DNA from: Pecten maximus
Taxonomy: Eukaryota
Length of the DNA: 64,000 nt
Reading direction: 5' to 3'
Assembly: GCF_902652985.1 (NCBI RefSeq)
Contig: NC_047016.1
Location: 40,114,001 to 40,178,000, forward strand
Part shown: one piece after another, positions 8,612 to 58,254 of the stretch
Layout of the letters: each line of letters begins with the position of its first letter
How positions within the stretch are numbered: the first letter of the stretch is position 1
Notes under the pieces: generated by a model
Seen by the model: the letters and a program-made list of their open reading frames with translations, nothing else
The model's database searches: none
What the model was told of the DNA's origin: nothing
Translations under genes and position numbers: made by a program

Positions 8612-10117
8612 TATGGGGCGCCGTTTTACTATTTATTCCCATTTGGTGATATCACCTATTCAAATAGGTGATATCACCTATTCAAATGAGTGATATCACC
8701 TATTCGTTTCATTAAGTGATATCACCTATTCGAATAGGTGATATCACTTAAGAACTTTTCTAAGTGATATCACCTATTCGAATGAGTGATATCACCTATT
8801 CGTTTCATTAAGTGATATCACCCATTCGAATAGGTGATATCACTCATTCGAATAGGTGATATCACTTATTGAAACGAATAGGTGATATCACCAATTCGAA
8901 TAGGTGATATCACTCATTCGAATAGGTGATATCACTCATTCGAATAGGTGATATCACTTAATGAAACGAATAGGTGATATCACCAATTCATTTTTCAAAT
9001 AAGTGATATCACCTATTCGAATAGGTGATATCACTTAATGAAACGAATAGGTGATATCACCAATTCATTTTTCAAATAAGTGATATCACCTATTCGAATA
9101 GGTGATATCACCCATTCGAATAGGTGATATCACTTAATGAAACGAATAGGTGATATCACTTATTCGAATAGGTGATATCACTCATTCGAATAGGTGATAT
9201 CACCAATTGGAATAGGTGATATCACTTAAAAATATTCTTAAGTGATATCACATATTTGAATAGGTGATATCACCCATTCGAATAGGTGATATCACTTATA
9301 AAATTCTTAAGTGATATCATCTATTCGAATGAGTGATATCACCTATACGAATAGGTGATATCACTTATGAAATTTTATAAGTGATATCACCTATTCGAAT
9401 TGGTGATATCACCTATTCGAATGAGTGATATCACCTATTCAATCAGTGATATCACCTATTCGAATAGGTGATATCACCAATTCATTTTTCAAATAAGTGA
9501 TATCGACTATTCGTTTCATTAAGTGATATCACCTATTCGAATGAGTGATATCACCTATTCGTTTCAATAAGTGATATCACCTATTCGAATGAGTGATATC
9601 ACCTATTCGAATGGGTGATATCACTTAATGAAACGAATAGGTGATATCACTTATTCGAATAGGTGATATCACTCATTCGAATAGGTGATATCACTTTAAA
9701 AAGTTCTTAAGTGATATCACCTATTTGAATAGGTGATATCACTCATTTGAATAGGTGATATCACCAAATGGGAATAAATAGTAAAACGGCGCCCCATAGA
9801 TATCACCTGTTCGAATAGGTGATATCACTTAAGAATATTTTTAAGTGATATCACCTATTCCAATTGGTGATATCAACTATTCGAATGAGTGATATCACCT
9901 ATTCGAATGAGTGATATCGCCTATTCGTTTCATTAAGTGATATCACCTATTCGAATGGGTGATATCATCTATTCGAATGGGTGATATCACTTATTTGAAA
10001 AATGAATTGGTGATATCACCTATTCGAATAGGTTATATCACTGACTGAATAGGTGATATCACTGATTGAATAGGTGATATCACCAAATGGGAATAAATAG
10101 TAAAACGGCGCCCCATA
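8612..10117. mobile_element. MITE-like element filled with palindromic 22-bp GTGATATCAC-CTATTCGAATAG minisatellite
   Basis: Left end TATGGGGCGCCGTTTTACTATTTATTCCCATTTGG at 8612; exact inverse ending at 9798 and again at 10117. Confidence 0.85.
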
Positions 10118-11097
10118 ATGGCGGCAATCATGGATTAGGCCTATGGACTGACCAGAAAAATATCAACATTTGGTAAGGACCATCTCGGGATCATTTCAGG
10201 TAAGGTAGAACTTGAGAAGAAGTTTGAAATAAGTGTTGTTCAGGAAATTGAAAACTATGATTGCGCAAGCATGTTACAAAATGGCAACCGTGTCTGCCAT
10301 GTTTAGATTTTACGAGGCTGAAAAATAGCAACACTTTGTTGGCTACCCTTTCTAATCATCCTCACCGATTTCCAGCTCTATGGCACCAGTGTAAGAAGCG
10401 AAGTATAAAATGCGTTATTCATTTCAAGATGGCTGCCTCGGACCTACCCGAAAAATAACAATACTTAGATCTAGTCAGGGCCATCTCGGGAACATTCCAG
10501 GAAAGTTTCAGCTTTCAGTTCAGTGGAACTCGAGAAGTTTGAAATGTGAAAACGGACGGCGCATGACGACGGACGAAGTACGATTGCTATAAAATGGTCC
10601 CCCAAGAAATAAGAACAAGAGTATAAGAAATATAATGTTAAAGTTTATTTAGATAAAACAGTGTGGCACTAGTGATACTTGCAATTGTTAAAAAATCATA
10701 ACAGCTTTAATTATAGAACAATATAACAGTGTTGCTAAGTGACATTATAGAACCAAATGTGCTGATAATATACAAACACAACATAAGAATATGACAATAA
10801 ACAAACAATATTACGATAAACAAACAACATAACAATATGACAACATTATAAATACAACAATACAAAATGACATAGAAACACGCCGAAACAATGACAATAT
10901 ACAAACAATATATGATATACAAACACATTAATACAACAATATGACAACATGCAAACACAGCATCACACATTTGTGCTGATCAAACACTAATCAATTATAC
11001 GTAGCACTAACGTCTATGGATATCGGAATTACCGAGATTAACCTATCACATTATCAGTCTATCACACGCCCCTCCAGAGAATGCTGTAGTTGGTCTA

Positions 11098-12101
11098 TCA
11101 CACGCCCCTCCAGAGAATGCTGTAGTTGGTCGTAGACATCCTGGCTAGCTCGTCAGTCTCCACGGTCCTTCCCGATGTGGCTGGCATCTCCAAGTCTGGG
11201 TCTCCTCCCAGGGAAGTGAGGACAAGGGCAGATAACTCCTGGACCTGGCGATTCTTCGTGGATCGGTACTGGTCAAACATCCTGCGGACACCCTGGATGA
11301 TGGACTTGCGGGTCAGTAGGTGGAGAACAAGGCTGTGGGCATCGTCAAGTGTGGATAGGAAAAGTTGTCGGTCAAGGCGGGTCAACTGGTCATCTGGAAT
11401 AAAAGATTAAATACATGTATATGTTACTATGTTCAAAGACATTATTCAAGATAAGATCTATCGCACATTGTCCAATAAAAAAAAAAAAATAGAAACTGGA
11501 CATAAGAGTTACGACCGGAAATAAACACACAAGTGTTGATCCCTTTAAAAAAGTCTATATACCAGAAAAAAACCATTTGATTTATATTGAAATGATACAG
11601 TATAGAAATAATCTATTTATTTAGCATTTCTTTGTTGGTATGAAAAACGAACTTTCAACAATTTTAATTTAAACACCTTAAGAATGTGGAATTACGATTC
11701 ATTCTAAATATTTGGTTTGTACATGTATGGTGGAAGAACTTCCTAACTTGTTATTACATTATTACATATTTCATCACAATGTATGGATGGTTTTATTGAG
11801 AAACTAACTGAATTAAAAATAATAAGATAGGATATTTACCCTAACAATACAATTATCCTGAAGTGGGTTTGAGCAATTTAATTAAAGTTATTAAAAAGCG
11901 TTGAAAAAAATGAAGAAAAAATATAAGTTTGATATTGTGCTTTCTAAGAATTAATAATGTTTACATCAAAATAATAGCTTTTTTATCTTAACAATACATA
12001 CCTAAGAAGTTGACCTGCTTGGCAGCGTTGTCGTGGGCCAGTAACAGACTCTGGAGTTTCTGGGCGTAGTACACAACATCAGTAGAGGTCATCTCAGCCA
12101 T
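11098..12101 (-). CDS. Multicopy 131-aa orphan protein, copy 1 (2 exons)
   Basis: Exon 1 12101-12002 (MAEMTSTDVVYYAQKLQSLLLAHDNAAKQVNFL, strong Kozak ACCATGG, donor G|GTATGT), exon 2 11393-11098 (acceptor TTCCAG|, DDQLTRLDRQ...SILWRGV*); 396 nt, phase-1 intron of 608 bp. Confidence 0.88.
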
Positions 12102-12329: not shown

Positions 12330-12873
12330 TGAGATCAAAGGTTTCTTGTCCAGATATGGCTTGGTTTTACCGTACAGGTAATTAGAGGTGGAAATGGAGG
12401 TAAGATCAAAGGTTTCTTGTCCAGGTATGGCTTGGTGTTACTGTACAGGTAATTAGTGGTGGTACTGGAGGTAAGATCAAAGGTTTCTTGTCCAGGTATG
12501 GCTTGGTGTTACTGTACAGGTAATTAGAGGTGGAAATGGAGATAAGATCAAAGGTTTCTTGTCCAGGTATGGCTTGGTTTTACTGTACGGGTAATTAGAG
12601 GTGGTACTGGAGGTAAGATCAAAGGCCTCTTGTCCAGGTATGGCTTGGCGTTACTGTACAGGTAATTAGAGGTGATACTGGAGGTAAGATCAAAGGCCTC
12701 TTGTCCAGGTATGGCTTGGTGTTACTGTACAGGTAATTAGAGGTGATACTGGAGGTAAGATCAAAGGTCTCTTGTCCAGGTATGGCTTGGTGTTACTGTA
12801 CAGGTAATTAGTGGTGGTACTGGAGGTAAGATCAAAGGCCTCTTGTCCTGGTATGGCTTGGTGTTATTGTACA
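12330..12873 (-). promoter_or_regulatory. 71-bp tandem array upstream of copy 1; 8 units, 8 intact TCF/LEF sites
   Basis: AGATCAAAGG at 12332, 12403, 12474, 12545, 12616, 12687, 12758, 12829; unit also has TAATTA and two CAGGTA. Repeat is certain; regulatory role is inferred. Confidence 0.7.
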
Positions 12874-13444
12874 GTTGCAAATTGATTTGACTAAGTTGAC
12901 TATTGACTTAGGTATTCCAAGTGTTATATACAACATACAATAATGTACAGTTCATTACGGCGATGGAAAATCAAATAAATTATACATTTTTCATTACGTC
13001 CTTGTAGATTGTTTCTGCACTGACTAACGACAAAATGTGTCGGAATACAAAAAAAAAATATGGACATATGTTAAATTGAAAAGGTACGTGACAAAGAGAA
13101 GCCAGTTTTACGTTAGCAGGAAGTGACCGACTTAATAATATTGGAAATCAAGTTAACCATGATGTTTGGAACGTAATGTGAAATTAAGTTTTAGATATTT
13201 GCCTAAGTTACACAGTTCCTTTTTATCCTGAACGGTTAATAATTGAACCAGTTTATAAAATGATGGCCGATTCCAGTAATATTTCTTTATATATCTTTTA
13301 CGTAAATCAATATAAAGAGGACAGATAAGCATGAAATGAAATTCATCTTCTATCAAATTTTGAGTTCAGTTAATGCAAAATCCGTGTTCTATTGAAATAT
13401 TTTGGAATCTACCTTCTTCAATATGTAATTGATGAGACGATAAT

Positions 13445-14595
13445 CGAATAGGTGATATCACCAATTCATTTTTCAAATAAGTGATATCACCTATTCGAAT
13501 AGGTGATATCACTTAATGAAACGAATAGGTGATATCACCAATTCATTTTTCAAATAAGTGATATCACCTATTCGAATAGGTGATATCACCCATTCGAATA
13601 GGTGATATCACTTAATGAAACGAATAGGTGATATCACTTATTCGAATAGGTGATATCACTCATTCGAATAGGTGATATCACCAATTGGAATAGGTGATAT
13701 CACTTAAAAATATTCTTAAGTGATATCACATATTTGAATAGGTGATATCACCCATTCGAATAGGTGATATCACTTATAAAATTCTTAAGTGATATCATCT
13801 ATTCGAATGAGTGATATCACCTATACGAATAGGTGATATCACTTATGAAATTTTATAAGTGATATCACCTATTCGAATTGGTGATATCACCTATTCGAAT
13901 GAGTGATATCACCTATTCAATCAGTGATATCACCTATTCGAATAGGTGATATCACCAATTCATTTTTCAAATAAGTGATATCGACTATTCGTTTCATTAA
14001 GTGATATCACCTATTCGAATGAGTGATATCACCTATTCGTTTCAATAAGTGATATCACCTATTCGAATGAGTGATATCACCTATTCGAATGGGTGATATC
14101 ACTTAATGAAACGAATAGGTGATATCACTTATTCGAATAGGTGATATCACTCATTCGAATAGGTGATATCACTTTAAAAAGTTCTTAAGTGATATCACCT
14201 ATTTGAATAGGTGATATCACTCATTTGAATAGGTGATATCACCAAATGGGAATAAATAGTAAAACGGCGCCCCATAGATATCACCTGTTCGAATAGGTGA
14301 TATCACTTAAGAATATTTTTAAGTGATATCACCTATTCCAATTGGTGATATCAACTATTCGAATGAGTGATATCACCTATTCGAATGAGTGATATCGCCT
14401 ATTCGTTTCATTAAGTGATATCACCTATTCGAATGGGTGATATCATCTATTCGAATGGGTGATATCACTTATTTGAAAAATGAATTGGTGATATCACCTA
14501 TTCGAATAGGTTATATCACTGACTGAATAGGTGATATCACTGATTGAATAGGTGATATCACCAAATGGGAATAAATAGTAAAACGGCGCCCCATA
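13445..14595. repeat. Duplicated, left-truncated copy of the GTGATATCAC palindromic array
   Basis: Same variant order as 8967-10117, including both right-hand termini. Confidence 0.9.
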
Positions 14596-15575
14596 ATGGC
14601 GGCAATCATGGATTAGGCCTATGGACTGACCAGAAAAATATCAACATTTGGTAAGGACCATCTCGGGATCATTTCAGGTAAGGTAGAACTTGAGAAGAAG
14701 TTTGAAATAAGTGTTGTTCAGGAAATTGAAAACTATGATTGCGCAAGCATGTTACAAAATGGCAACCGTGTCTGCCATGTTTAGATTTTACGAGGCTGAA
14801 AAATAGCAACACTTTGTTGGCTACCCTTTCTAATCATCCTCACCGATTTCCAGCTCTATGGCACCAGTGTAAGAAGCGAAGTATAAAATGCGTTATTCAT
14901 TTCAAGATGGCTGCCTCGGACCTACCCGAAAAATAACAATACTTAGATCTAGTCAGGGCCATCTCGGGAACATTCCAGGAAAGTTTCAGCTTTCAGTCCA
15001 GTGGAACTCGAGAAGTTTGAAATGTGAAAACGGACGGCGCATGACGACGGACGAAGTACGATTGCTATAAAATGGTCCCCCAAGAAATAAGAACAAGAGT
15101 ATAAGAAATATAATGTTAAAGTTTATTTAGATAAAACAGTGTGGCACTAGTGATACTTGCAATTGTTAAAAAATCATAACAGCTTTAATTATAGAACAAT
15201 ATAACAGTGTTGCTAAGTGACATTATAGAACCAAATGTGCTGATAATATACAAACACAACATAAGAATATGACAATAAACAAACAATATTACGATAAACA
15301 AACAACATAACAATATGACAACATTATAAATACAACAATACAAAATGACATAGAAACACGCCGAAACAATGACAATATACAAACAATATATGATATACAA
15401 ACACATTAATACAACAATATGACAACATGCAAACACAGCATCACACATTTGTGCTGATCAAACACTAATCAATTATACGTAGCACTAACGTCTATGGATA
15501 TCGGAATTACCGAGATTAACCTTTCACATTATCAGTCTATCACACGCCCCTCCAGAGAATGCTGTAGTTGGTCTA

Positions 15576-16581
15576 TCACACACCCCTCCAGAGAATGCTG
15601 TAGTTGGTCGTAGACATCCTGGCTAGCTCGTCAGTCTCCACGGTCCTTCCCGATGTGGCTGGCATCTCCAAGTCTGGGTCTCCTCCCAGGGAAGTGAGGA
15701 CAAGGGCAGATAACTCCTGGACCTGGCGATTCTTCGTGGATCGGTACTGGTCAAACATCCTGCGGACACCCTGGATGATGGACTTGCGGGTCAGTAGGTG
15801 GAGAACAAGGCTGTGGGCATCGTCAAGTGTGGATAGGAAAAGTTGTCGGTCAAGGCGGGTCAACTGGTCATCTGGAATAAAAGATTAAATACATGTATAT
15901 GTTACTATGTTCAAAGACATTATTCAAGATAAGATCTATCGCACATTGTCCAATAAAAAAAAAAAAATAGAAACTGGACATAAGAGTTACGACCGGAAAT
16001 AAACACACAAGTGTTGATCCCTTTAAAAAAGTCTATATACCAGAAAAAAAACCATTTGATTTATATTGAAATGATACAGTATAGAAATAATCTATTTATT
16101 TAGCATTTCTTTGTTGGTATGAAAAACGAACTTTCAACAATTTTAATTTAAACACCTTAAGAATGTGGAATTACGATTCATTCTAAATATTTGGTTTGTA
16201 CATGTATGGTGGAAGAACTTCCTAACTTGTTGGATTATTACATATTTCATCACAATGTATGGATGGTTTTATTGAGAAACTAACTGAATTAAAAATAATA
16301 AGATAGGATATTTACCCTAACAATACAATTATCCTGAAGTGGGTTTGAGCAATTTAATTAAAGTTATTAAAAAGCGTTGAAAAAAAAGGATGAAGAAAAA
16401 ATATAAGTTTGATATTGTGCTTTCTAAGAATTAATAATGTTTACATCAAAATAATAGCTTTTTTATCTTAACAATACATACCTAAGAAGTTGACCTGCTT
16501 GGCAGCGTTGTCATGGGCCAGTAACAGACTCTGGAGTTTCTGGGCGTAGTACACAACATCAGTAGAGGTCATCTCAGCCAT
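15576..16581 (-). CDS. Multicopy 131-aa orphan protein, copy 2 (2 exons)
   Basis: Exons 16581-16482 and 15871-15576; same protein as copy 1; part of the 4.48-kb tandem duplication. Confidence 0.85.
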
Positions 16582-16809: not shown

Positions 16810-17353
16810 TGAGATCAAAGGTTTCTTGTCCAGATATGGCTTGGTTTTACTGTACAGGTAATTAGAGGTGGAAATGGAGGTAAGATCAAAGGTTTCTTGT
16901 CCAGGTATGGCTTGGTGTTACTGTACAGGTAATTAGTGGTGGTACTGGAGGTAAGATCAAAGGTTTCTTGTCCAGGTATGGCTTGGTGTTACTGTACAGG
17001 TAATTAGAGGTGGAAATGGAGGTAAGATCAAAGGTTTCTTGTCCAGGTATGGCTTGGTTTTACTGTACAGGTAATTAGAGGTGGTACTGGAGGTAAGATC
17101 AAAGGCCTCTTGTCCAGGTATGGCTTGGCGTTACTGTACAGGTAATTAGAGGTGATACTGGAGGTAAGATCAAAGGTCTCTTGTCCAGGTATGGCTTGGT
17201 GTTACTGTACAGGTAATTAGAGGTGGTACTGGAGGTAAGATCAAAGGTCTCTTGTCCAGGTATGGCTTGGTGTTACTGTACAGGTAATTAGAGTTGGTAC
17301 TGGAGGTAAGATCAAAGGTCCCTTGTCCAGATATGGCTTGGTGTTACTGTACA
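16810..17353 (-). promoter_or_regulatory. 71-bp tandem array upstream of copy 2; 8 units
   Basis: AGATCAAAGG every 71 bp from 16812 to 17309. Confidence 0.7.
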
Positions 17354-17633
17354 GTTGCAAATTGATTTGACTAAGTTGACTATTGACTTAGGTATTCCAA
17401 GTGTTATATACAACATACAATAATGTACAGTTCATTACGGCGATGGAAAATCAAATAAATTATACATTTTTCATTACGTCCTTGTAGATTGTTTCTGCAC
17501 TGACTAACGACAAAATGTGTCGGAATACAAAAAAAAAAATATGGACATATGTTAAATTGAAAAGGTACGTGACAAAGAGAAGCCAGTTTTACGTTAGCAG
17601 GAAGTGACCGACTTAATAATATTGGAAATCAAG

Positions 17634-21460: not shown

Positions 21461-21579
21461 CACACCATTACAATGTAGAAACACATTCTGTCCATGTCAA
21501 CACTATTAGTAGCACTATGTTTATAGATAGGAAATGTCGATCTCAAACAATCACATTATCAGTCTATCACATTATCAGT

Positions 21580-21723
21580 CTATCACACACCCCTCCAGAG
21601 AATGCTGTAGTTGGTCTATCACACACCCCTCCAGAGAATGCTGTAGTTGGTCTATCACACGCCCCTCCAGAGGATGCTGTAGTTGGTCTATCACACACCC
21701 CTCCAGAGAATGCTGTAGTTGGT
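21580..21723 (-). repeat. 36-bp tandem repeat spanning the stop codon of copy 3 (4 copies)
   Basis: CTATCACACACCCCTCCAGAGAATGCTGTAGTTGGT x4; two copies in genes 1 and 2, one in genes 4 and 5. Confidence 0.95.
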
Positions 21724-22725
21724 AGTAGACATCCTGGCTAGCTCGTCAGTCTCCACGGTCCTTCCCGATGTGGCTGGCATCTCCAAGTCTGGGTCTCCTC
21801 CCAGGGAAGTGAGGACAAGGGCAGATAACTCCTGGACCTGACGGTTCTTGGTGGATCGGTACTGGTCAAACATCCTGCGGACACCCTGGATGATGGACTT
21901 GCGGGTCAGTAGGTGGAGAACAAGGCTGTGGGCATCGTCAAGTGTGGATACGAAAAGTTGTCGGTCAAGGCGGATCAACTGGTCATCTGGAATGAAGAAA
22001 AAATCTGTTACACATTGTACAAAACAAAATACTCTAGCCGGGAACAAAATATAGCAAGCTGAACAGCATGTTGATTTCATATACTTCCGTAAATAAATCA
22101 GACCATATTGAAATTACTTGAATGGCATTATTTTCATATGCTACCATTAACATAAGTTATACTGAAATAATTCAGTAAAACAAAAGCTACCATTGTTATT
22201 TTCACGTAATAGGGATGTAATTTTGAACAAAGTCGTGTCAACAGCTGGTGTTAATTTGTAATTTTACCTTTCTCACTGTTATTGCTCTTTCGTTATTCGT
22301 TATCGATACACGCAACCTTAACCAGTTTTTTTCGTGGTTAAAACTTGCAATTTTATTATTTAACGAAGAACAGGTAACACTGCAAAGATACTGCCATGTT
22401 TGGTTTTTTTAAATTTCTGCAAAAGTAAAATATTCCAAATTATTTACAATTATCCTGAATTGAGTCAATATCATCTCAAAAACGTCAAAAGAAAAAATTG
22501 AGCAATAAAAAAATTCTTTCACGATTAAATGAAATTGCTGGAAGTTTGATATTGTGCTTTGTAAAACTAAAATACTGTTTATAATTTAAAAAAAAAAAAG
22601 AGTTATTTATCCCTACAATACATACCTAAGAAGTTGACCTGCTTGGCAGCGTTGTCGTGGGCCAGTAACAGACTCTGGAGTTTCTTGGCGTAGTACACAA
22701 CATCAGTAGAGGTCATCTCAGCCAT
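21691..22725 (-). CDS. Multicopy 131-aa orphan protein, copy 3 (2 exons)
   Basis: Exons 22725-22626 and 21986-21691; intact frame and splice sites; substitutions Q14K, T38I, L46V; 639-bp intron. Confidence 0.88.
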
Positions 22726-22967: not shown

Positions 22968-23451
22968 AATGGAGGTAAGATCAAAGGTATCATGTCCAGG
23001 TATGGCTTGGTGTTACTGTTCAGGTAATTAGTGGCGGTAATGGAGGTAAGATCAAAGGTCCCTTGTCCATGTATGGCTTGGTGTTACTGTACAGGTAATT
23101 AGTGGTGGTACTGGAGGTAAGATCAAAGGTCCCTTGTCCAGGTATGGCTTGGTGCTACTGTACAGGTAATTAGAGGTGGTACTGGAGGTAAGATCAAAGG
23201 TTTCTTGTCCAGGTATGGCTTGGTGTTACTGTACAGGTAATAAGAGGTGGTACTGGAGGTAAGATCAAAGGTCTCTTGTCCAGGTATGGATTGGTGTTAC
23301 TGTACAGGTAATTAGAGGTGGTACTGGAGGTAAGATCAAAGGTCTCTTGTCCAGGTATGGCTTGGTGTTATTGTCCAGGTAATTAGAGGTGGTACTGGAG
23401 GTAAGATCAAAGGTTTCTTGTCCAGGTATGGCTTGGCGTTACTGTACAGGT
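22968..23451 (-). promoter_or_regulatory. 71-bp tandem array upstream of copy 3; 7 units
   Basis: AGATCAAAGG every 71 bp from 22978 to 23404. Confidence 0.7.
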
Positions 23452-26942: not shown

Positions 26943-27847
26943 TGAAATAGGTTAAATTTCTTAAGTGCTAGAATGGTGTGTTAAAGGGGATCTGCGATCG
27001 TGAAAATATATATCTCTAAGTTTTATTTTCTTCGGCTTAACAACAGATCTGAGATGGAAAATGTAGTTATAAAAACAGTATTACAACATATACATGTTTA
27101 TTTACTGTTTAAAAACAAAAAAATAAACAACAAAAACAACACACACACACAAAAACGGTATTATTCTAGATGAAGCTTGAACTATCTATGTACTGGGTTT
27201 TTTCAGCTCACTTTTCATGTTTTCCCTGGGAAACAATGCAAATATCTTTATCCAGCTCTATGGTGGTGGTTTGATTCCTGAAATGATAATTAACATATCA
27301 AGCAAATGTGAAAGGACATGAGCAAAATTTTATGTTTTGTGCAAATTAATGTATTCTAAATATAACATGTTTCTATTTGTAATTTTACAACATTAAACAT
27401 ACACTTAAATATTGTCATGTGAATATTAGAATTGTCACAAACTTCACTCTATCAACCATGCGTACCTACACATTCGTACAAATTTACATTCATTACTTTT
27501 ACTTCAAAGTCTTTGTTTTTTACGAAAACATTTACTTTTTAAGTTTGAATTTAAGTTAAAATTTTAAGTTTAATTCCGTTGATGTTATTTACGTCAGTCT
27601 ATAAGACATCGATCATAGCCCAATATTTCTTGTCAGTATCGAGTTGGAAGTATTTTTAAGGCATCATAGCTATCGCCTGGATGATATAAATGTACACAAA
27701 AGTGGTAAGTGTTAAATAGTATGTGTATTGTAACTTCACTTCTACTTTTCAGATTATTTTATTTTGTACGATCTGGATTTCTTTTTTTTTAATTTTCGGT
27801 CAAAATAAATCACAATAACAACAATCACCATCTCAAGTTGGAGACCT

Positions 27848-28402
27848 TACCTGTATAGTAACACCAAGCCATACCTGGACAAGAAACCTTTGATCTTACG
27901 TCCATTACCACCTCTAATTACCTGTACAGTAACACCAAGCCATACCTGGACAGGAGACCTTTGATCTTACCTCCAGTACCACCATTAATTACCTGTACAG
28001 TAACACCAAGCCATACCTAGACAAGAGACCTTTTATCTTACCTCCAGTACCACCACTAATTACCTGTACAGTAACACCAAGCCATACCTAGACAAGAAAC
28101 CTTTGATCTTACCTCCATTACCACCACTAATTACCTGTACAGTAACACCAAGCCATACCTGGACAAGAAACCTTTGATCTTACCTCCAGTACCACCTCTA
28201 ATTACCTGTACAGTAACACCAAGCCATACCTGGACAAGAAACCTTTGATCTTACCTCCATTACCACCACTAATTACCTGTACAGTAACACCAAGCCATAC
28301 CTGGACAAGAGACCTTTGATCTTACCTCCAGTACCACATCTAATTACCTGTACAGTAACACCAAGACAAATACCTGGACAAGAGACCTTTGATCTTACCT
28401 CC
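27848..28402 (+). promoter_or_regulatory. 71-bp tandem array upstream of copy 4; 8 units, 7 intact TCF/LEF sites
   Basis: CCTTTGATCT from 27887 to 28386, one mutated (28029). Confidence 0.7.
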
Positions 28403-28484
28403 GTTACAATATCTACTCCCATTTAACGGTAAAACTGTTTAAATGTAATTAAGATAATTACAATTTGGGAGGAGTTAATTCTTG

Positions 28485-28545
28485 CGACCAATGAAATTGA
28501 ATAACTGAAGTGACCAATCAAAATGAAACAGTGTCCATAAAACCA
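28485..28545 (+). promoter_or_regulatory. Core promoter: two CCAAT boxes 26 bp apart plus TATA-like box (equivalents in all five copies)
   Basis: CCAAT at 28488 and 28514 then CATAAAA; copy 5 CCAAT at 36635 and 36661 then TGTATAA; copies 1/2 TATATAA and copy 3 TATAAAA on minus strand at the same offset; spacer between boxes diverges. Confidence 0.75.
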
Positions 28546-28625
28546 GACGATTTTCTAATCTGATATCAACATTGCCTCTGTACCTACTGCCAGAACTACC
28601 CACTACTTGACCTCTACACTGTACC

Positions 28626-29489
28626 ATGGCTGAGATGACCTCTACTGATGTTGTGTACTACGCCCAGAAGCTCCAGAGTCTGTTACTGGCCCACGACAAC
28701 GCTGCCAAACAGGTCAACTTCTTAGGTATGTATTGTAGGGATAATTAACATACATTTAGATTTTTTCTATACCTGTTTAATATTTCAAAATCTCAAAGTT
28801 TATTTTTTCATTTTCCCCATTGTTTGTATCTTTGCACTGTTTTCTGTATTTTAGCAGGAAAGAAAACTTTATAATAAATAAAATAAAATAAATAAATTAT
28901 TATTAACCAATATGTGAAAATAACACGATGGATTGTTATTTTTTTCCTGTATTATTTCAGTATAAATATCGTTTATATACTGGTAGTATATGTATATGAA
29001 AAAAATACAAACACATTAATTAATTCTTATCTTCCTGTCCTTTTACATATCTTTCAGCAATATGAAACATAGCTTATCTTCGTACAATGTTGCTATATAT
29101 TTAACTTCGTACAATATGTACTATATTTCATCTTTGTATAATATGTTTTATATTTGTAGAATGTGTAATATATTTTATTTTTTTTTCTTCCAGATGACCA
29201 GTTGACTCGCCTTGACCGACAACTTTTCCTATCCACACTTGACGATGCCCACAGCCCTGTCCTCCACCTACTGACCCGCAAGTCCATCATCCAGGGTGTC
29301 CGCAGGATGTTTGACCAGTACCGATCCACCAAGAATCGTCAGGTCCAGGAGTTATCTGCCCTTGTCCTCACTTCCCTGGGAGGAGACCCAGACTTGGAGA
29401 TGCCAGCCACATCGGGAAGGACCGTGGAGACTGACGAGCTAGCCAGGATGTCTACCACCAACTACAGCATTCTCTGGAGGGGTGTGTGA
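28626..29489 (+). CDS. Multicopy 131-aa orphan protein, copy 4 (2 exons)
   Basis: Exons 28626-28725 and 29194-29489; intact; L55P; 468-bp intron; AATAAA at 29945. Confidence 0.88.
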
Positions 29490-30258
29490 TAGACTGATAA
29501 TGTGATTGGTTAATATCGATAATTCCTGTGTCCATAGACGTTAGTGCTATTAAGTGTTTAATAATTGGTTTCTATACACTGTCATATTGTAAGTTAGCGT
29601 ATTGTTACATTGCATTGTTGTGTTTGTGTATTGTCATTGCATTGTTGTGTTTGTGTATTGTCATATTGCAATTTTGTGTTTGTGTATTGTCATTGTATTG
29701 TGTTTGTACCTTGTTACATTGTATTATTGTGTTTGTATATTGTCATTGTATTATTGTATTTGTACCTTGTCATATTGTATTGTTGTCTGTATATAACATT
29801 GAATTGTTAAGTTCGTTAACTGTTGTATTGTATTTTGTCATATTGTATTATTGTGGTTGTTTATTTTGTATTGTATGAGTAATATGATTTTATAATATTG
29901 AATAATTCTTTCATGTGAATCGCTAGTGCTACATTACTTTATTAAATAAATATTAACATAACAATATCATATCAATTTGTTGTTTATCTATTTATTCTTA
30001 TTTTCTTCCTGGAACGCTAGTCAGTAGCGAGTGACCTATTTCTTATCCTATATACAGAGAGTTCTTCATTCCCTCCCACGGGCGAATGCATGTATAGACA
30101 AAGAGATTTTAACCGTTGAAATCAGATATAGGTATAGTTGAATAAGATATATTTCTATTTACTCGAAAAATACAGATATCTATATATGCAAATAATATAT
30201 CTGTTAATTTCATCTAGTGTTTCTGTATATATGTGGGGAAAAGCAAATAAGTCTTAGA

Positions 30259-31026
30259 CAGTGGACTCTGTCTAAACCGGACACCTTTGGGACCACAAAA
30301 TAAAGCCGGTTTGTAGAGAGTTTCGGATTGTAGAGATTCTACTTGATATCGTCGTTGAATGCAAAAAAAAAAAGAACAGGTGTCGCTGTGCATAATTCAT
30401 GCATATACAAACTTCGAATTGAATAACATAATTTAATTCAACACTGGCAATATCACACTATATGTCCGTTACATCGGTTGAAAACAATCACTGATTGTTG
30501 TTTGTTTTAAGAGGCCTTCCACCGAATCCGAACAATCAACCGATTTGACACTTTCTATAAGTGCAGATTCCCAATCTGAGGAATTAGCCTCAATTTCTAA
30601 TTGGTCCTTAATGTTGGCGGCTGTCGTGAGATCCATGTTTGTTGATAATAGAAACGGAGTAATACAAAAGGTATGTCGTCACCATCATCTACGACTTCCT
30701 CATCCGGGTACGTTCGTGTAGTGAGGTCCGCGAAGGAGAAGCCAGCCAGCATGAAACATTTCTGAATTACGATACATTTACAAACATGTTACATTACTGG
30801 TATAAATTGACAAAAAAATGCATTCTTTATTGTACCTAACAACTGTTTAGGTGATTATCCAGTCGTAGCCACCTGTGGACAATGACGTTTAACGGTCAAT
30901 TAATAATATACTGTGCGGCAATTACAACTGTATAAACACTCGTCGGGAGCCCCTGAAGTCAAATTATTTGGCCGGTTTTGGCAAATATCCAGATTGGACA
31001 GAGTCCGGTTTGGACAGAGTGCACTG
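30259..31026. mobile_element. Tc1/mariner-type MITE
   Basis: TIRs CAGTGGACTCTGTCTAAACCGGAC / GTCCGGTTTGGACAGAGTGCACTG, TA on right. Confidence 0.8.
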
Positions 31027-35926: not shown

Positions 35927-36549
35927 CTGTACAGTAAAAACAAGTCATACCTGGACAAGGGACCTTTGATCTTACCTCCAGTACCACCACTAATTACCTG
36001 TACAGTAAAAACAAGTCATACCTGGACAAGGGACCTTTGATCTTATCGCCAGCACCATCACTAATTACCTGTACAGTAACACCAAGCCATACCTGGACAA
36101 GATACCTTAGATCTGGTCTCCAGTACCACCACTAATTACCTGTACAGTAACACCAAGCCATACCTGGAAAAGAGCCCTTTGATCTGGTCTCCAGTACCAC
36201 CACTAATTACCTGTACAGTAACACCAAGCCATACCTGGACAAGAAACCTTTGATCTTACCTCCAGTACCACCACTAACTACCTGTACAGTAACACCAAGC
36301 CATACCTGGACAAAAGCCCTTGAATCTTACCTCCAGTAACACCACTAATTACCTGTACAGTAACACCAAGCCATACCTGGACAAGGAACCTTTGATCTTA
36401 CCTCCAGTACCACCACTAATTACCTGTACATTAACACCAAGCCATAACTGGACAAGATACCTTTGATCTTACCTCCAGTACCACCTCTAATTACCTGTAC
36501 AGTAACACCAAGCCAAATACCTGGACAAGAGACCTTTGATCTTACCTCC
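35927..36549 (+). promoter_or_regulatory. 71-bp tandem array upstream of copy 5; 9 units, 7 intact TCF/LEF sites
   Basis: CCTTTGATCT from 35963 to 36533, two mutated (36105, 36318), both in distal/middle units. Confidence 0.7.
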
Positions 36550-36772: not shown

Positions 36773-37707
36773 ATGGCTGAGATGACCTCTACTGATGTTG
36801 TGTACTACGCCCAGAAACTCCAGAGTCTGTTACTGGCCCACGACAACGCTGCCAAGCAGGTCAACTTCTTAGGTATGTATTGTAGGGATAATTAACATAC
36901 ATTTAGATTTTTTTTCTATGTCTGTTCAATATTTTTTCCTCAAATATCAAAATCTATTTTTTTCCCAATTATTAGTTCTTAATCTTCCAATTTAGCGGTA
37001 TTAATATCTTTGCAGTGTTTTCTGTTCTTCGTGAAGTTTCCTTGGAATTGGTTGAGGTAACGTTCATTGATAAAGAATAATCAATTTTAGCAGGAAAGAA
37101 AAAATTATAATAAATCAAATAAAATAAAAAAAATTATCATTAACATGTGAAATATGTGATAATAGCACGATGGATTATTATTATTTTACTGTATTATTTC
37201 AGTATTAATATCGTTTGTTACTGGTAGCATATGAAAAAAATATAAATCAACACATTAATTAATTATCTTCCTTTCCTTCTCTTACCTATCTTTCAACAAT
37301 ACAATGTTGCTATATATTTTTTTTATGACAATGTGTACTATATTTTATCTTTGTATAATATATTTTATTTTTGTAGAATGTGTAATATATTTTTTATTTC
37401 TTTTATTCCAGATGACCAGTTGACCCGCCTTGACCGACAACTTTTCCTATCCACACTTGACGATGCCCACAGCCTTGTTCTCCACCTACTGACCCGCAAG
37501 TCCATCATCCAGGGTGTTCGCAGGATGTTTGACCAGTACCGATCCACCAAGAACCGTCAGGTCCAGGAGTTATCTGCCCTTGTCCTCACTTCCCTGGGAG
37601 GAGACCCAGACTTGGAGATGCCAGCCACATCGGGAAGGACCGTGGAGACTGACGAGCTAGCCAGGATGTCTACGACCAACTACAGCATTCTCTGGAGGGG
37701 CGTGTGA
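36773..37707 (+). CDS. Multicopy 131-aa orphan protein, copy 5 (2 exons)
   Basis: Exons 36773-36872 and 37412-37707; intact; 539-bp intron; AATAAA at 38782. Confidence 0.88.
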
Positions 37708-37877
37708 TAGACTGATAATGTGATAGTTTAATCTCGGTAATTCCTGTGTCCTTGGACTAGTGCTAATAAGTGACTATATTTTGCTATTTCTTTTATAAGG
37801 AGACGAATTAATATAAGCTTTAGGCTTGTTTTCGAATTCTTACATTCATGTAATGTGTACAACTTTGCATTTGCAAT

Positions 37878-38660
37878 GTGTTTGTATATTGTAACACAGT
37901 ATTTGTATATTGTAACATTGTATTGTTGTGTTTGTATATTGTAACACAGTATTTGTATATTGTAACACAGTATTTGTATATTGTAACATTGTATTGTTGT
38001 GTTTGTATATTGTAACACAGTATTTGTATATTGTAACACAGTATTTGTATATTGTAACATTGTATTGTTGTGTTTGTATATTGTAACACAGTATTTGTAT
38101 ATTGTAACATTGTATTGTTGTGTTTGTATATTGTAACATTGTATTGTTGTGTTTGTATATTGTAACATTGTATTGTTGTGTATGTATATTGTAACATTGT
38201 ATTGTTGTGTTTGTATATTGTAACACAGTATTTGTATATTGTAACATTGTATTGTTGTGTTTGTATATTGTAACACAGTATTTGTATATTGTAACACAGT
38301 ATTTGTATATTGTAACATTGTATTGTTGTGTTTGTATATTGTAACACAGTATTTGTATATTGTAACACAGTATTTGTATATTGTAACATTGTATTGTTGT
38401 GTTTGTATATTGTAACATTGTATTGTTGTGTTTGTATATTGTAACATTGTATTGTTGTGTTTGTATATTGTAACATTGTATTGTTGTGTATGTATATTGT
38501 AACATTGTATTGTTGTGTTTGTATATTGTAACACTGTATTGTTTTGTTTGTATATTGTAACATTGTATTGTTTTGTTCGTATATTGTAACATTGTATTAT
38601 TTTGTTCCTATATTGTAACATGGTATTTTTGTGTTTGTATATTGTAACATTGTATTTTTG
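37878..38660 (+). repeat. Compound 29/20-bp TTGTA-rich tandem array in presumptive 3' UTR of copy 5
   Basis: TTTGTATATTGTAACATTGTATTGTTGTG alternating with TTTGTATATTGTAACACAGTA, between stop 37707 and AATAAA 38782. Confidence 0.95.
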
Positions 38661-58079: not shown

Positions 58080-58254
58080 NNNNNNNNNNNNNNNNNNNNN
58101 NNNNNNNNNNNNNNNNNNNNNNNNNNNNNNNNNNNNNNNNNNNNNNNNNNNNNNNNNNNNNNNNNNNNNNNNNNNNNNNNNNNNNNNNNNNNNNNNNNNN
58201 NNNNNNNNNNNNNNNNNNNNNNNNNNNNNNNNNNNNNNNNNNNNNNNNNNNNNA
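58080..58254. other. Assembly gap
   Basis: Run of N. Confidence 1.

What the first reader, a model, noticed from the sequence alone, without database searches (positions are those of the whole stretch)
27848..28402. 71-bp minisatellite is a natural 'TOPflash-like' homotypic enhancer
Seen: unit AGATCAAAGG-TYTCTTGTC-CAGGTAT-GGCTTGGTGTTACTGTA-CAGGTAATTAG-WGGTGGTACTGGAGGTA; 37 of 40 units across the five arrays keep AGATCAAAGG intact while the bases right after it (TTT/TCT/CCT/TCC) and the GGTGGWAMT segment vary freely. The gene-proximal unit always retains the site. Established: TCF/LEF consensus; TAATTA is a homeodomain core; CAGGTA is bound by ZEB/Zfh-type zinc fingers and matches Drosophila TAGteam variants (CAGGTAA/CAGGTAT), though Zelda itself is an arthropod protein. 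Inference: unit number (7-9) may be held near an optimum and act as an expression tuning knob.
Basis: partly seen in the sequence, partly recalled or inferred. Interest (0 to 1): 0.85.

Follow-up and report, generated by a model that had tools for sequence, protein, structure and literature searches.

The report
Conserved promoter minisatellite with TCF sites
A 71-base tandem repeat sitting just upstream of five copies of a small scallop gene has been kept almost unchanged in four scallop genera while neutral DNA scrambled, so it is very probably a working multi-copy gene switch whose oldest ingredient is a perfect binding site for the Wnt-pathway factor TCF.

Summary
The window (Pecten maximus) carries five arrays of a 71-bp unit, 40 units in all, and 37 of them have an intact AGATCAAAGG. 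Each array ends about 150 bp upstream of a CCAAT/CCAAT/TATA promoter of a spliced, expressed 131-aa orphan gene. The satellite occurs nowhere else in the 918-Mb genome.

The same array stands upstream of the orthologues in Argopecten (71 bp), Ylistrum (76 bp) and Mizuhopecten (62 bp). Introns there are near random and raw synonymous divergence (pS) is 0.31-0.48. Yet a 45-nt core of the unit consensus differs at only 0-3 positions, while a spacer changes sequence and length. This points to purifying selection combined with concerted evolution.

The TCF-type site is less variable than the spacer, but no less variable than the rest of the core. The unit is therefore a composite module, not a pure TOPflash.

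Non-repeated promoters of the closer paralogues and of oyster and clam orthologues also carry CCTTTGATC-type sites at -170 to -320 (11 found, 1.4 expected). More distant family members have none.

No Helper sites occur except in Argopecten, and no binding or Wnt-response data exist. My best reading is a reiterated promoter-proximal enhancer with an ancestral TCF-type input.

The scan's other notes on this stretch are from the same window.

The parts
27847..28402 (+). Array 4 of the 71-bp unit. It has 8 units, 7 with an intact TCF-type site, and reads CCTTTGATCT on the gene-sense (+) strand. It lies upstream of gene copy 4.
35927..36549 (+). Array 5. It has 9 units, 7 with an intact site, and lies upstream of gene copy 5.
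12332..12874 (-). Array 1. It has 8 units, all intact, and lies upstream of gene copy 1 on the minus strand.
16812..17354 (-). Array 2. It has 8 units, all intact, and is a near-identical duplicate of array 1. It lies upstream of gene copy 2.
22970..23451 (-). Array 3. It has 7 units, all intact, and lies upstream of gene copy 3.
28403..28625 (+). Proximal promoter and 5' UTR of copy 4. It holds CCAAT boxes at 28488-28492 and 28514-28518 and a TATA-like CATAAAA at 28536-28542. The 5' ends of the RNA contigs lie near 28550. This architecture is conserved in four genera.
28626..28725 (+). Exon 1 coding part of gene copy 4 (33 codons plus 1 nt).
   Evidence: splice joint in RNA contigs
28726..29193 (+). 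Intron (468 nt, GT..AG), removed in contigs of four runs.
29194..29489 (+). Exon 2 coding part, including the stop codon. The product is the 131-aa uncharacterised protein LOC117322064.
11098..12101 (-). Gene copy 1 (coding span).
15576..16581 (-). Gene copy 2 (coding span).
21691..22725 (-). Gene copy 3 (coding span).
36773..37707 (+). Gene copy 5 (coding span).

Best explanation
The 71-bp array is a promoter-proximal enhancer built by tandem reiteration of one composite cis-regulatory module. Each unit has a constrained core of about 48 nt and a 14-nt spacer that is free to change. In gene-sense order the core carries TAATTA fused to ACCTGTACAG, then an ACACCAAGCC block, a second TACCTGG block, and CCTTTGATCT. 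The array ends about 150 bp upstream of a CCAAT/CCAAT/TATA core promoter and multiplies the input of the factors that read the module. This would allow very high expression of the small helical orphan protein in some samples. The oldest element of the module is the CCTTTGATC(T) site, the optimal site for the HMG domain of TCF/Pangolin. It is most likely read by TCF, which would make the gene family a Wnt/beta-catenin target or, without the signal, a TCF/Groucho-repressed one. TAATTACCTG is a second old element, perhaps read by a ZEB/Zfh-type factor with zinc fingers and a homeodomain. What is shown: position, non-coding nature, uniqueness in the genome, selection on the core, concerted evolution, and motif sharing with paralogue promoters. 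What is inferred: enhancer activity and the identity of the binding proteins.
For: Position. Each of the five arrays precedes one gene copy. The promoter, with two CCAAT boxes and a TATA box, is conserved in eight sequences from four genera, and the last CCTTTGATCT is invariant. RNA contigs splice the intron in four runs and start near 28550, downstream of the array. Uniqueness. Three units of the array used as a query, and a 19-mer from the core, match only these five places in 918 Mb. Selection. Orthologous arrays exist in Argopecten, Ylistrum and Mizuhopecten. Introns there are 0.51-0.59 identical against 0.46-0.49 for shuffled sequence, and pS is 0.31-0.48. The 45-nt core consensus differs at 0, 0 and 3 positions (binomial P 6e-6 to 1e-13). 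Core blocks vary 3-10 times less among units than the spacer in Pecten, Ylistrum and Mizuhopecten, and 1.2-2.6 times less in Argopecten. Concerted evolution. Species-diagnostic changes are present in nearly all units of a species, and unit length is 62, 71 or 76 bp. A neutral array would therefore have drifted at the neutral rate. TCF-type site as the ancestral element. Sense-strand CCTTTGATC lies at -174 and -171 in two Pecten paralogues that are 38-40% identical in protein and have unalignable promoters (P about 0.001 each). A Mizuhopecten paralogue has four sites at -254 to -172, including AGATCAAAGG. Sites are also present in oysters and Mercenaria. Overall there are 11 WRE 8-mers in eight 600-bp promoters against 1.38 expected (0 of 2000 shuffles). 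TAATTACCTG is shared with two paralogue promoters in the same orientation. In Argopecten nearly every unit also has a Helper motif RCCGCC 11 bp from the HMG site. The motif definitions come from PMC4267635.
Against: There is no binding, accessibility or reporter data. Pecten, Ylistrum, Mizuhopecten and all paralogue promoters lack Helper sites. Invertebrate TCFs carry a C-clamp, and HMG-only multimers are silent in fly tissues (PMC4154663). The TCF block is not more conserved than the other core blocks. Five more distant Pecten family members and the Mytilus and Lottia genes have no WRE site within 600 bp. The prospective test was not significant (2 found against 1.43 expected). Minisatellites carrying this 10-mer occur at eight other loci, about as often as a control pattern. 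The tissue or stage of high expression is unknown, so no link to Wnt activity can be drawn.
Confidence: 0.55

Rival explanations
1. The array is a functional reiterated enhancer, but CCTTTGATCT is read by a factor other than TCF (another HMG/Sox-type or an unknown mollusc factor). The array would then be a tissue-specific, Wnt-independent enhancer.
For: All the conservation evidence is silent on which protein binds. Helper sites are absent in three of four genera and in all paralogue promoters. In flies, HMG sites alone do not confer Wnt response in vivo (PMC4154663). The very high transcript depth in one run fits a strong tissue-specific enhancer.
Against: The conserved 10-mer equals the optimal TCF site and fits CTTTGWWS (PMC4267635). 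From my own knowledge, the T at the second position of ATCAAAG is the TCF rather than the Sox preference. In Argopecten a Helper motif has spread to nearly every unit.
Confidence: 0.25
2. One reading: a homotypic TOPflash-like array in which the TCF site is the only functionally constrained element and the rest of the unit is filler.
For: There are 37 intact sites in 40 units. The site is invariant in the proximal unit of all species.
Against: About 35 further core positions are equally or more conserved within and between genera. TAATTACCTG(TACAG) is shared with paralogue promoters. Sites are 71 bp apart, far sparser than in the synthetic reporters.
Confidence: 0.07
3. The array is a neutral minisatellite that hitch-hiked with the tandem gene duplication. 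Its uniformity reflects recent duplication and gene conversion only.
For: Arrays 1 and 2 are near-identical. Units are homogenised within species. The genome is full of minisatellites, including others with the same 10-mer.
Against: The array persists in four genera whose introns are randomised. The consensus core shows 0-3 differences in 45 nt, against 14-21 expected at the synonymous rate. The spacer inside the same units does change.
Confidence: 0.03
4. The array acts at the RNA level or as a chromatin element. Examples are upstream or antisense transcripts rich in 5' splice-site-like CAGGTA/GAGGTAAGA motifs, a hairpin RNA, or a boundary between tandem gene copies.
For: The antisense strand folds better than shuffles (z -3.25). 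One run has low-depth contigs inside the array and a spliced contig starting in the last unit, while the intron is uncovered. Each unit carries three donor-like sites on the antisense strand.
Against: There is no Rfam match and the sense strand fold is ordinary (z -0.98). One arm of the predicted hairpin lies in the spacer, which is deleted in Mizuhopecten. In the run with very high expression the array has no coverage.
Confidence: 0.08

Closest known systems
TOPflash / Super-TOPflash synthetic Wnt reporters (multimerised CCTTTGATC sites before a minimal promoter)
   Same: The 10-mer is identical. There are 7-14 copies in one orientation directly upstream of a TATA promoter.
   Different: This array is natural, and sites are 62-76 bp apart instead of about 10-20 bp. 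Each site is embedded in a further conserved composite core of about 38 nt. No Wnt response has been shown. [quoted passage not shown]
Natural Wnt-responsive cis-regulatory modules of invertebrates (e.g. Drosophila nkd and Notum W-CRMs) with HMG plus Helper site pairs
   Same: The HMG site fits CTTTGWWS. In Argopecten an RCCGCC Helper lies 11 bp away in nearly every unit.
   Different: Helper sites are absent in Pecten, Ylistrum, Mizuhopecten and the paralogue promoters. The sites here are perfect and reiterated, not few and degenerate.
Tandem-repeat enhancers and promoter VNTRs (SV40 72-bp repeats, Xenopus rDNA 60/81-bp spacer enhancers, human INS and MAOA promoter VNTRs); named from my own knowledge
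   Same: A 60-80-bp (or shorter) unit is reiterated upstream of a promoter, and copy number is a plausible dose knob.
   Different: Those arrays are lineage-restricted or polymorphic within a species. This one has kept both its array state and its unit sequence across four genera with dS of 0.4-0.8.
Homotypic clusters of transcription-factor binding sites
   Same: There are many sites for the same factor(s) within 0.5-0.9 kb next to a promoter.
   Different: The cluster here is generated and maintained as an exact tandem repeat with concerted evolution, rather than by independent site gain.

Membership tests
Minisatellite (tandem repeat with 10-100-bp unit) | Head-to-tail copies of a 10-100-bp unit | tested here: met
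   TRF: period 71, 6.8-8.7 copies, 90-95% matches, five arrays
Minisatellite (tandem repeat with 10-100-bp unit) | Copy-number variation between alleles or individuals | not tested
   Only paralogous arrays (7-9 units) and other species (5-14 units) were compared.
Wnt-responsive cis-regulatory module bound by TCF/Pangolin | HMG-domain site matching CTTTGWWS | tested here: met
   There are 7-8 sites per Pecten array, 5-14 in most arrays of the other genera (3 in the short second Ylistrum array), and the 9-mer CCTTTGATC in nearly all. Consensus definition from PMC4267635.
Wnt-responsive cis-regulatory module bound by TCF/Pangolin | Helper site (RCCGCC) near the HMG site, as used by C-clamp TCFs of invertebrates | tested here: not met
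   Pecten arrays have 0, 0, 1, 0 and 0 Helper motifs, and Ylistrum and Mizuhopecten have none. Argopecten has 7-9 per array. None occurs in the paralogue promoters.
Wnt-responsive cis-regulatory module bound by TCF/Pangolin | TCF occupancy and beta-catenin-dependent activation | not testable with these tools
   No ChIP, CUT&Tag, ATAC or perturbation data were reachable. The sample identities of the RNA runs are coded.
Tandem-repeat or homotypic-cluster enhancer | Non-coding and adjacent to a promoter that is used | tested here: met
   Units of 62, 71 and 76 bp are not multiples of three. The array ends about 150 bp from the TATA box. Spliced transcripts start downstream of the array.
Tandem-repeat or homotypic-cluster enhancer | Sequence constraint beyond the neutral expectation | tested here: met
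   The core shows 0-3 differences in 45 nt against pS of 0.31-0.48, and introns are near random.
Tandem-repeat or homotypic-cluster enhancer | Enhancer activity in a reporter or in vivo | not testable with these tools
   This needs an experiment.
Dispersed satellite or transposon-derived repeat | Many gene-independent copies in the genome | tested here: not met
   Whole-genome DNA and 19-mer pattern searches match only the five arrays.
Known structured RNA family | Match to an Rfam covariance model | tested here: not met
   No match at E up to 1 on either strand of 27600-28700.

The most novel reading that the evidence does not exclude
This would be a natural multimer of optimal TCF sites that works as a Wnt/beta-catenin-responsive enhancer. 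It would have been kept as a tandem array with a selected unit sequence since the common ancestor of four scallop genera, and derived by amplification of a TCF-site promoter module that is ancestral to a mollusc-specific gene family. That would be the first natural counterpart of TOPflash, a rare case of a minisatellite under long-term purifying selection, and a ready-made endogenous Wnt reporter for bivalves.
Probability: 0.35. Interest if true: 0.8.

Novelty: new variant of a known kind. Interest (0 to 1): 0.62.

Why it matters
Minisatellites are usually treated as fast-evolving, mostly neutral DNA. Here the array state and a core of about 48 nt have survived in four genera whose introns are randomised. 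That gives a clean natural example of selection acting on a tandem-repeat enhancer together with concerted evolution.

The Wnt field holds that dense clusters of perfect HMG sites do not occur in natural targets (PMC4154663). This locus is a direct candidate exception. It can be tested with a simple reporter, with EMSA, and by GSK3 inhibition in larvae.

The locus also points to an uncharacterised mollusc-wide family of small helical proteins as possible TCF targets. It could also supply a compact strong promoter and enhancer for bivalve transgenesis.

Tried and rejected
- Pfam on the exons and on 30 family members gave nothing.
- The ESM Atlas gave only sub-threshold bacterial look-alikes.
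- The AlphaFold model (pLDDT 84.6) is a long helical hairpin plus a C-terminal helix. Foldseek against the PDB found only generic coiled-coil or ESCRT-III-like matches with E > 0.1. The protein's function stays unknown.
- A search for the TCF N-terminal domain (PF08347) in the genome found nothing, but it also found nothing in the controls, so it is uninformative.
- Literature searches by gene identifiers and by TCF/scallop terms found nothing on this locus.
- Divergence times could not be extracted from PMC11439060 because they are only in a figure.
- The antisense hairpin (z -3.25) was rejected as conserved structure because one arm lies in the spacer that Mizuhopecten lacks.
- Local alignment of the whole unit against paralogue promoters was not significant on its own (p 0.07-0.2). 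The signal is specific to the TCF 9-10-mer and to TAATTACCTG.
- The prospective motif test on more distant family members was negative.
Exons were searched by reference, and the full-length protein used was the database entry returned.

Full report
**What is there**

The window is Pecten maximus, chromosome-scale contig C2. TRF finds five arrays of one 71-bp unit, at 12332-12874, 16812-17354, 22970-23451, 27847-28402 and 35927-36549. The 10-mer AGATCAAAGG occurs 37 times, always inside the arrays, against 0.18 expected. Counting by site positions there are 40 units, of which three are mutated.

The arrays belong to a fivefold segmental duplication. Each lies about 225 bp upstream of the ATG of a two-exon gene, with three copies on the minus strand and two on the plus strand. 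The gene product is a 131-aa protein annotated only as uncharacterised (LOC117322063/4). The CTTTGATC strand of the site is always the gene-sense strand.

**Promoter and transcription**

Between the array and the ATG lie two CCAAT boxes (28488-28492 and 28514-28518) and a TATA-like box (28536-28542). This architecture, and the last CCTTTGATCT of the array, are conserved in eight promoters from four genera.

Contigs of four small public runs skip exactly 28726-29193 (GT..AG), so the runs contain RNA and the gene is expressed. In run X3 the exon k-mer depth is 1300-2290, with contig ends near 28550 and no coverage of the array. In run X6 the exon depth is about 10. That run has low-depth contigs inside the array and a spliced contig beginning at 28380, while the intron is uncovered. 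The main start site is therefore downstream of the array, and weak transcription of the array occurs in at least one sample. Sample identities are coded, so tissue and stage are unknown.

**Is it a dispersed repeat?**

No. Three units of the array used as a DNA query, and a 19-mer from the core allowing one mismatch, match only these five arrays in 918 Mb.

**Is the conservation more than recent duplication?**

The 40 Pecten units are not independent. Arrays 1 and 2 are 92-100% identical unit by unit. I therefore fetched the orthologous loci from other scallops. All three carry the same array in the same place: Argopecten irradians (71 bp, three arrays), Ylistrum balloti (76 bp, three arrays) and Mizuhopecten yessoensis (62 bp, about 14 units).

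As a neutral yardstick, the orthologous introns are 0.51-0.59 identical against 0.46-0.49 for shuffled sequence. Raw synonymous difference pS is 0.31-0.48 (dS 0.40-0.78), with dN/dS about 0.17.

Against this background, the unit consensus is identical between Pecten, Argopecten and Ylistrum at all 45 core positions (8-42 and 46-55 of my register). It differs at 3 positions in Mizuhopecten, giving binomial P from 6e-6 to 1e-13.

The length differences between species, and most substitutions, fall in the spacer (positions 56-71). It is largely deleted in Mizuhopecten and 5 bp longer in Ylistrum.

Species-diagnostic changes are present in nearly every unit of a species, so the arrays evolve in concert. 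Under concerted evolution a neutral array consensus still drifts at the mutation rate. The near-absence of change in the core therefore means purifying selection.

**Is the TCF-type site special within the unit?**

Among interior units, the 10-nt block CCTTTGATCT deviates from the species consensus at 1.4%, 11.9%, 2.7% and 0% of cells in Pecten, Argopecten, Ylistrum and Mizuhopecten. The spacer deviates at 6.0%, 14.6%, 19.2% and 17.2%. The difference is significant in three of four species.

The TCF block does not differ from the other core blocks in any species (p 0.13-0.8). The blocks containing ACCTGTACAG, ACACCAAGCC and TACCTGG are as well or better kept. The unit is therefore a composite module and not filler around one site.

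**Independent support for the TCF-type site**

The family is mollusc-wide, with about 130-aa proteins in oysters, mussels, clams and Lottia. The model is a helical hairpin with no informative structural match.

Two Pecten paralogues, only 38-40% identical to the window protein and to each other, have promoters that do not align. Both nevertheless carry a sense-strand CCTTTGATC, at -174 and -171 from the ATG (P about 0.001 each). Each also has a CTTTTGATCT variant further upstream.

A Mizuhopecten paralogue has four sites between -254 and -172, including AGATCAAAGG and CCTTTGATC, 60-150 bp upstream of its TATA box. It also has the 16-mer TTAATTACCTGTACAG at -422. TAATTACCTG also recurs four times, in the same orientation, in a tandem repeat 1.6 kb upstream of one Pecten paralogue. 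The oyster orthologues have a CCAAT/TATA promoter with two ATCAAAG sites near -300 and TGTACAGTAA beside them. Mercenaria has two WRE sites.

Across eight 600-bp promoters there are 11 matches to CTTTGWWS, against 1.38 in shuffles (0 of 2000). This is 11.6 times the density in the rest of the same loci, though that window was chosen after seeing the data.

A prospective test on further Pecten members was mixed. The closest member (L047, probably the orthologue of the Mizuhopecten paralogue) has two sites, including the perfect 10-mer. Five distant single-exon members have none. The total was 2 against 1.43 expected, which is not significant. Mytilus and Lottia also lack sites. The motif is therefore a feature of the closer two-exon clade and not of every homologue.

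**Points against a simple Wnt reading**

- Invertebrate TCFs use a C-clamp and Helper sites (RCCGCC). [quoted passage not shown]
- Pecten, Ylistrum, Mizuhopecten and all paralogue promoters lack Helper motifs. Only in Argopecten does ACCGCC, in place of ACCACC and 11 bp from the HMG site, occupy nearly every unit.
- A minisatellite carrying this 10-mer is not remarkable in itself in this genome. Eight other loci have one, about the rate of a reversed control pattern.
- No binding, accessibility or perturbation data could be reached.

**RNA-level alternatives**

There is no Rfam match. The sense strand folds like shuffled sequence. The antisense strand folds better (z -3.25), but one arm of that hairpin is in the spacer that Mizuhopecten lacks.

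**Verdict**

The array is very probably a functional, reiterated, promoter-proximal cis-regulatory element under long-term selection. The TCF-type site is a real and ancient component of it. However, the unit is composite rather than homotypic, and TCF binding and Wnt response remain inferences.

My odds are about 0.85 that the array is a functional cis-regulatory element, 0.8 that the CCTTTGATC block is a working site, 0.55 that TCF reads it, and 0.35-0.45 that the array is Wnt-responsive.

Copy number (7-9 in Pecten, 8-9 in Argopecten, 5-9 in Ylistrum, about 14 in Mizuhopecten) neither shows nor excludes an optimum.

Exons were handled by reference.

Noticed in passing
window 29599-29876 and 37877-38661; L030 7986-8788 and 11128-11794: The UGUA-rich 27-29-bp tandem repeats just downstream of the stop codon are also present, as a very similar 29-bp unit, downstream of the Argopecten orthologues. 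The 3' array is therefore conserved across genera as well.
   Followed up: partly
L032 5018-5266 (G000:C6, about 1.6 kb upstream of a distant paralogue): A 28/40/69-bp tandem repeat whose unit contains CTAATTACCTGG and ACACCTGGAC. These match two blocks of the 71-bp unit in the same orientation relative to the gene.
   Followed up: partly
G000:C4:10241809, C11:15478062, C11:18107335, C6:14612783, C3:40145484, C3:45357094, C2:53463928, C9:27214858: Eight other tandem repeats (units of about 25-75 bp) carry a periodic CCTTTGATCT. None lies beside a member of this gene family. A reversed control pattern gives a similar number of matches.
   Followed up: partly
L030 4989-5968 (minus strand): Argopecten has a head-to-head extra gene copy whose exon 2 match is split in two pieces (likely frameshifted). 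Its ATG lies only about 30 bp from the distal edge of an array, so it lacks a proximal promoter of its own.
   Followed up: no
window 27862-28246 and 28380-28723 (run X6): Run X6 has low-depth RNA contigs inside the array and a spliced contig that starts in the last unit, while the intron is uncovered. This indicates weak transcription through the array in one sample. The strand is unknown.
   Followed up: partly
window 8645-10084 and 13472-14562: Long arrays of a 22-bp unit built around the palindrome GGTGATATCACC, downstream of gene copies 1 and 2.
   Followed up: no
window 11057-11131, 15535-15609, 21578-21723: A 36-bp repeat spanning the stop-codon region of the minus-strand copies, with 2 copies in gene copies 1 and 2 and 4 copies in gene copy 3.
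   Followed up: no
window 30258-30373: A short stretch with high contig depth in all four RNA runs, with many loose ends and poly-A tails. It looks like the 3' part of a dispersed, transcribed repeat.
   Followed up: no
window 58080-58253; 46683-46734: A run of 174 N (left untouched) and a run of about 52 G.
   Followed up: no
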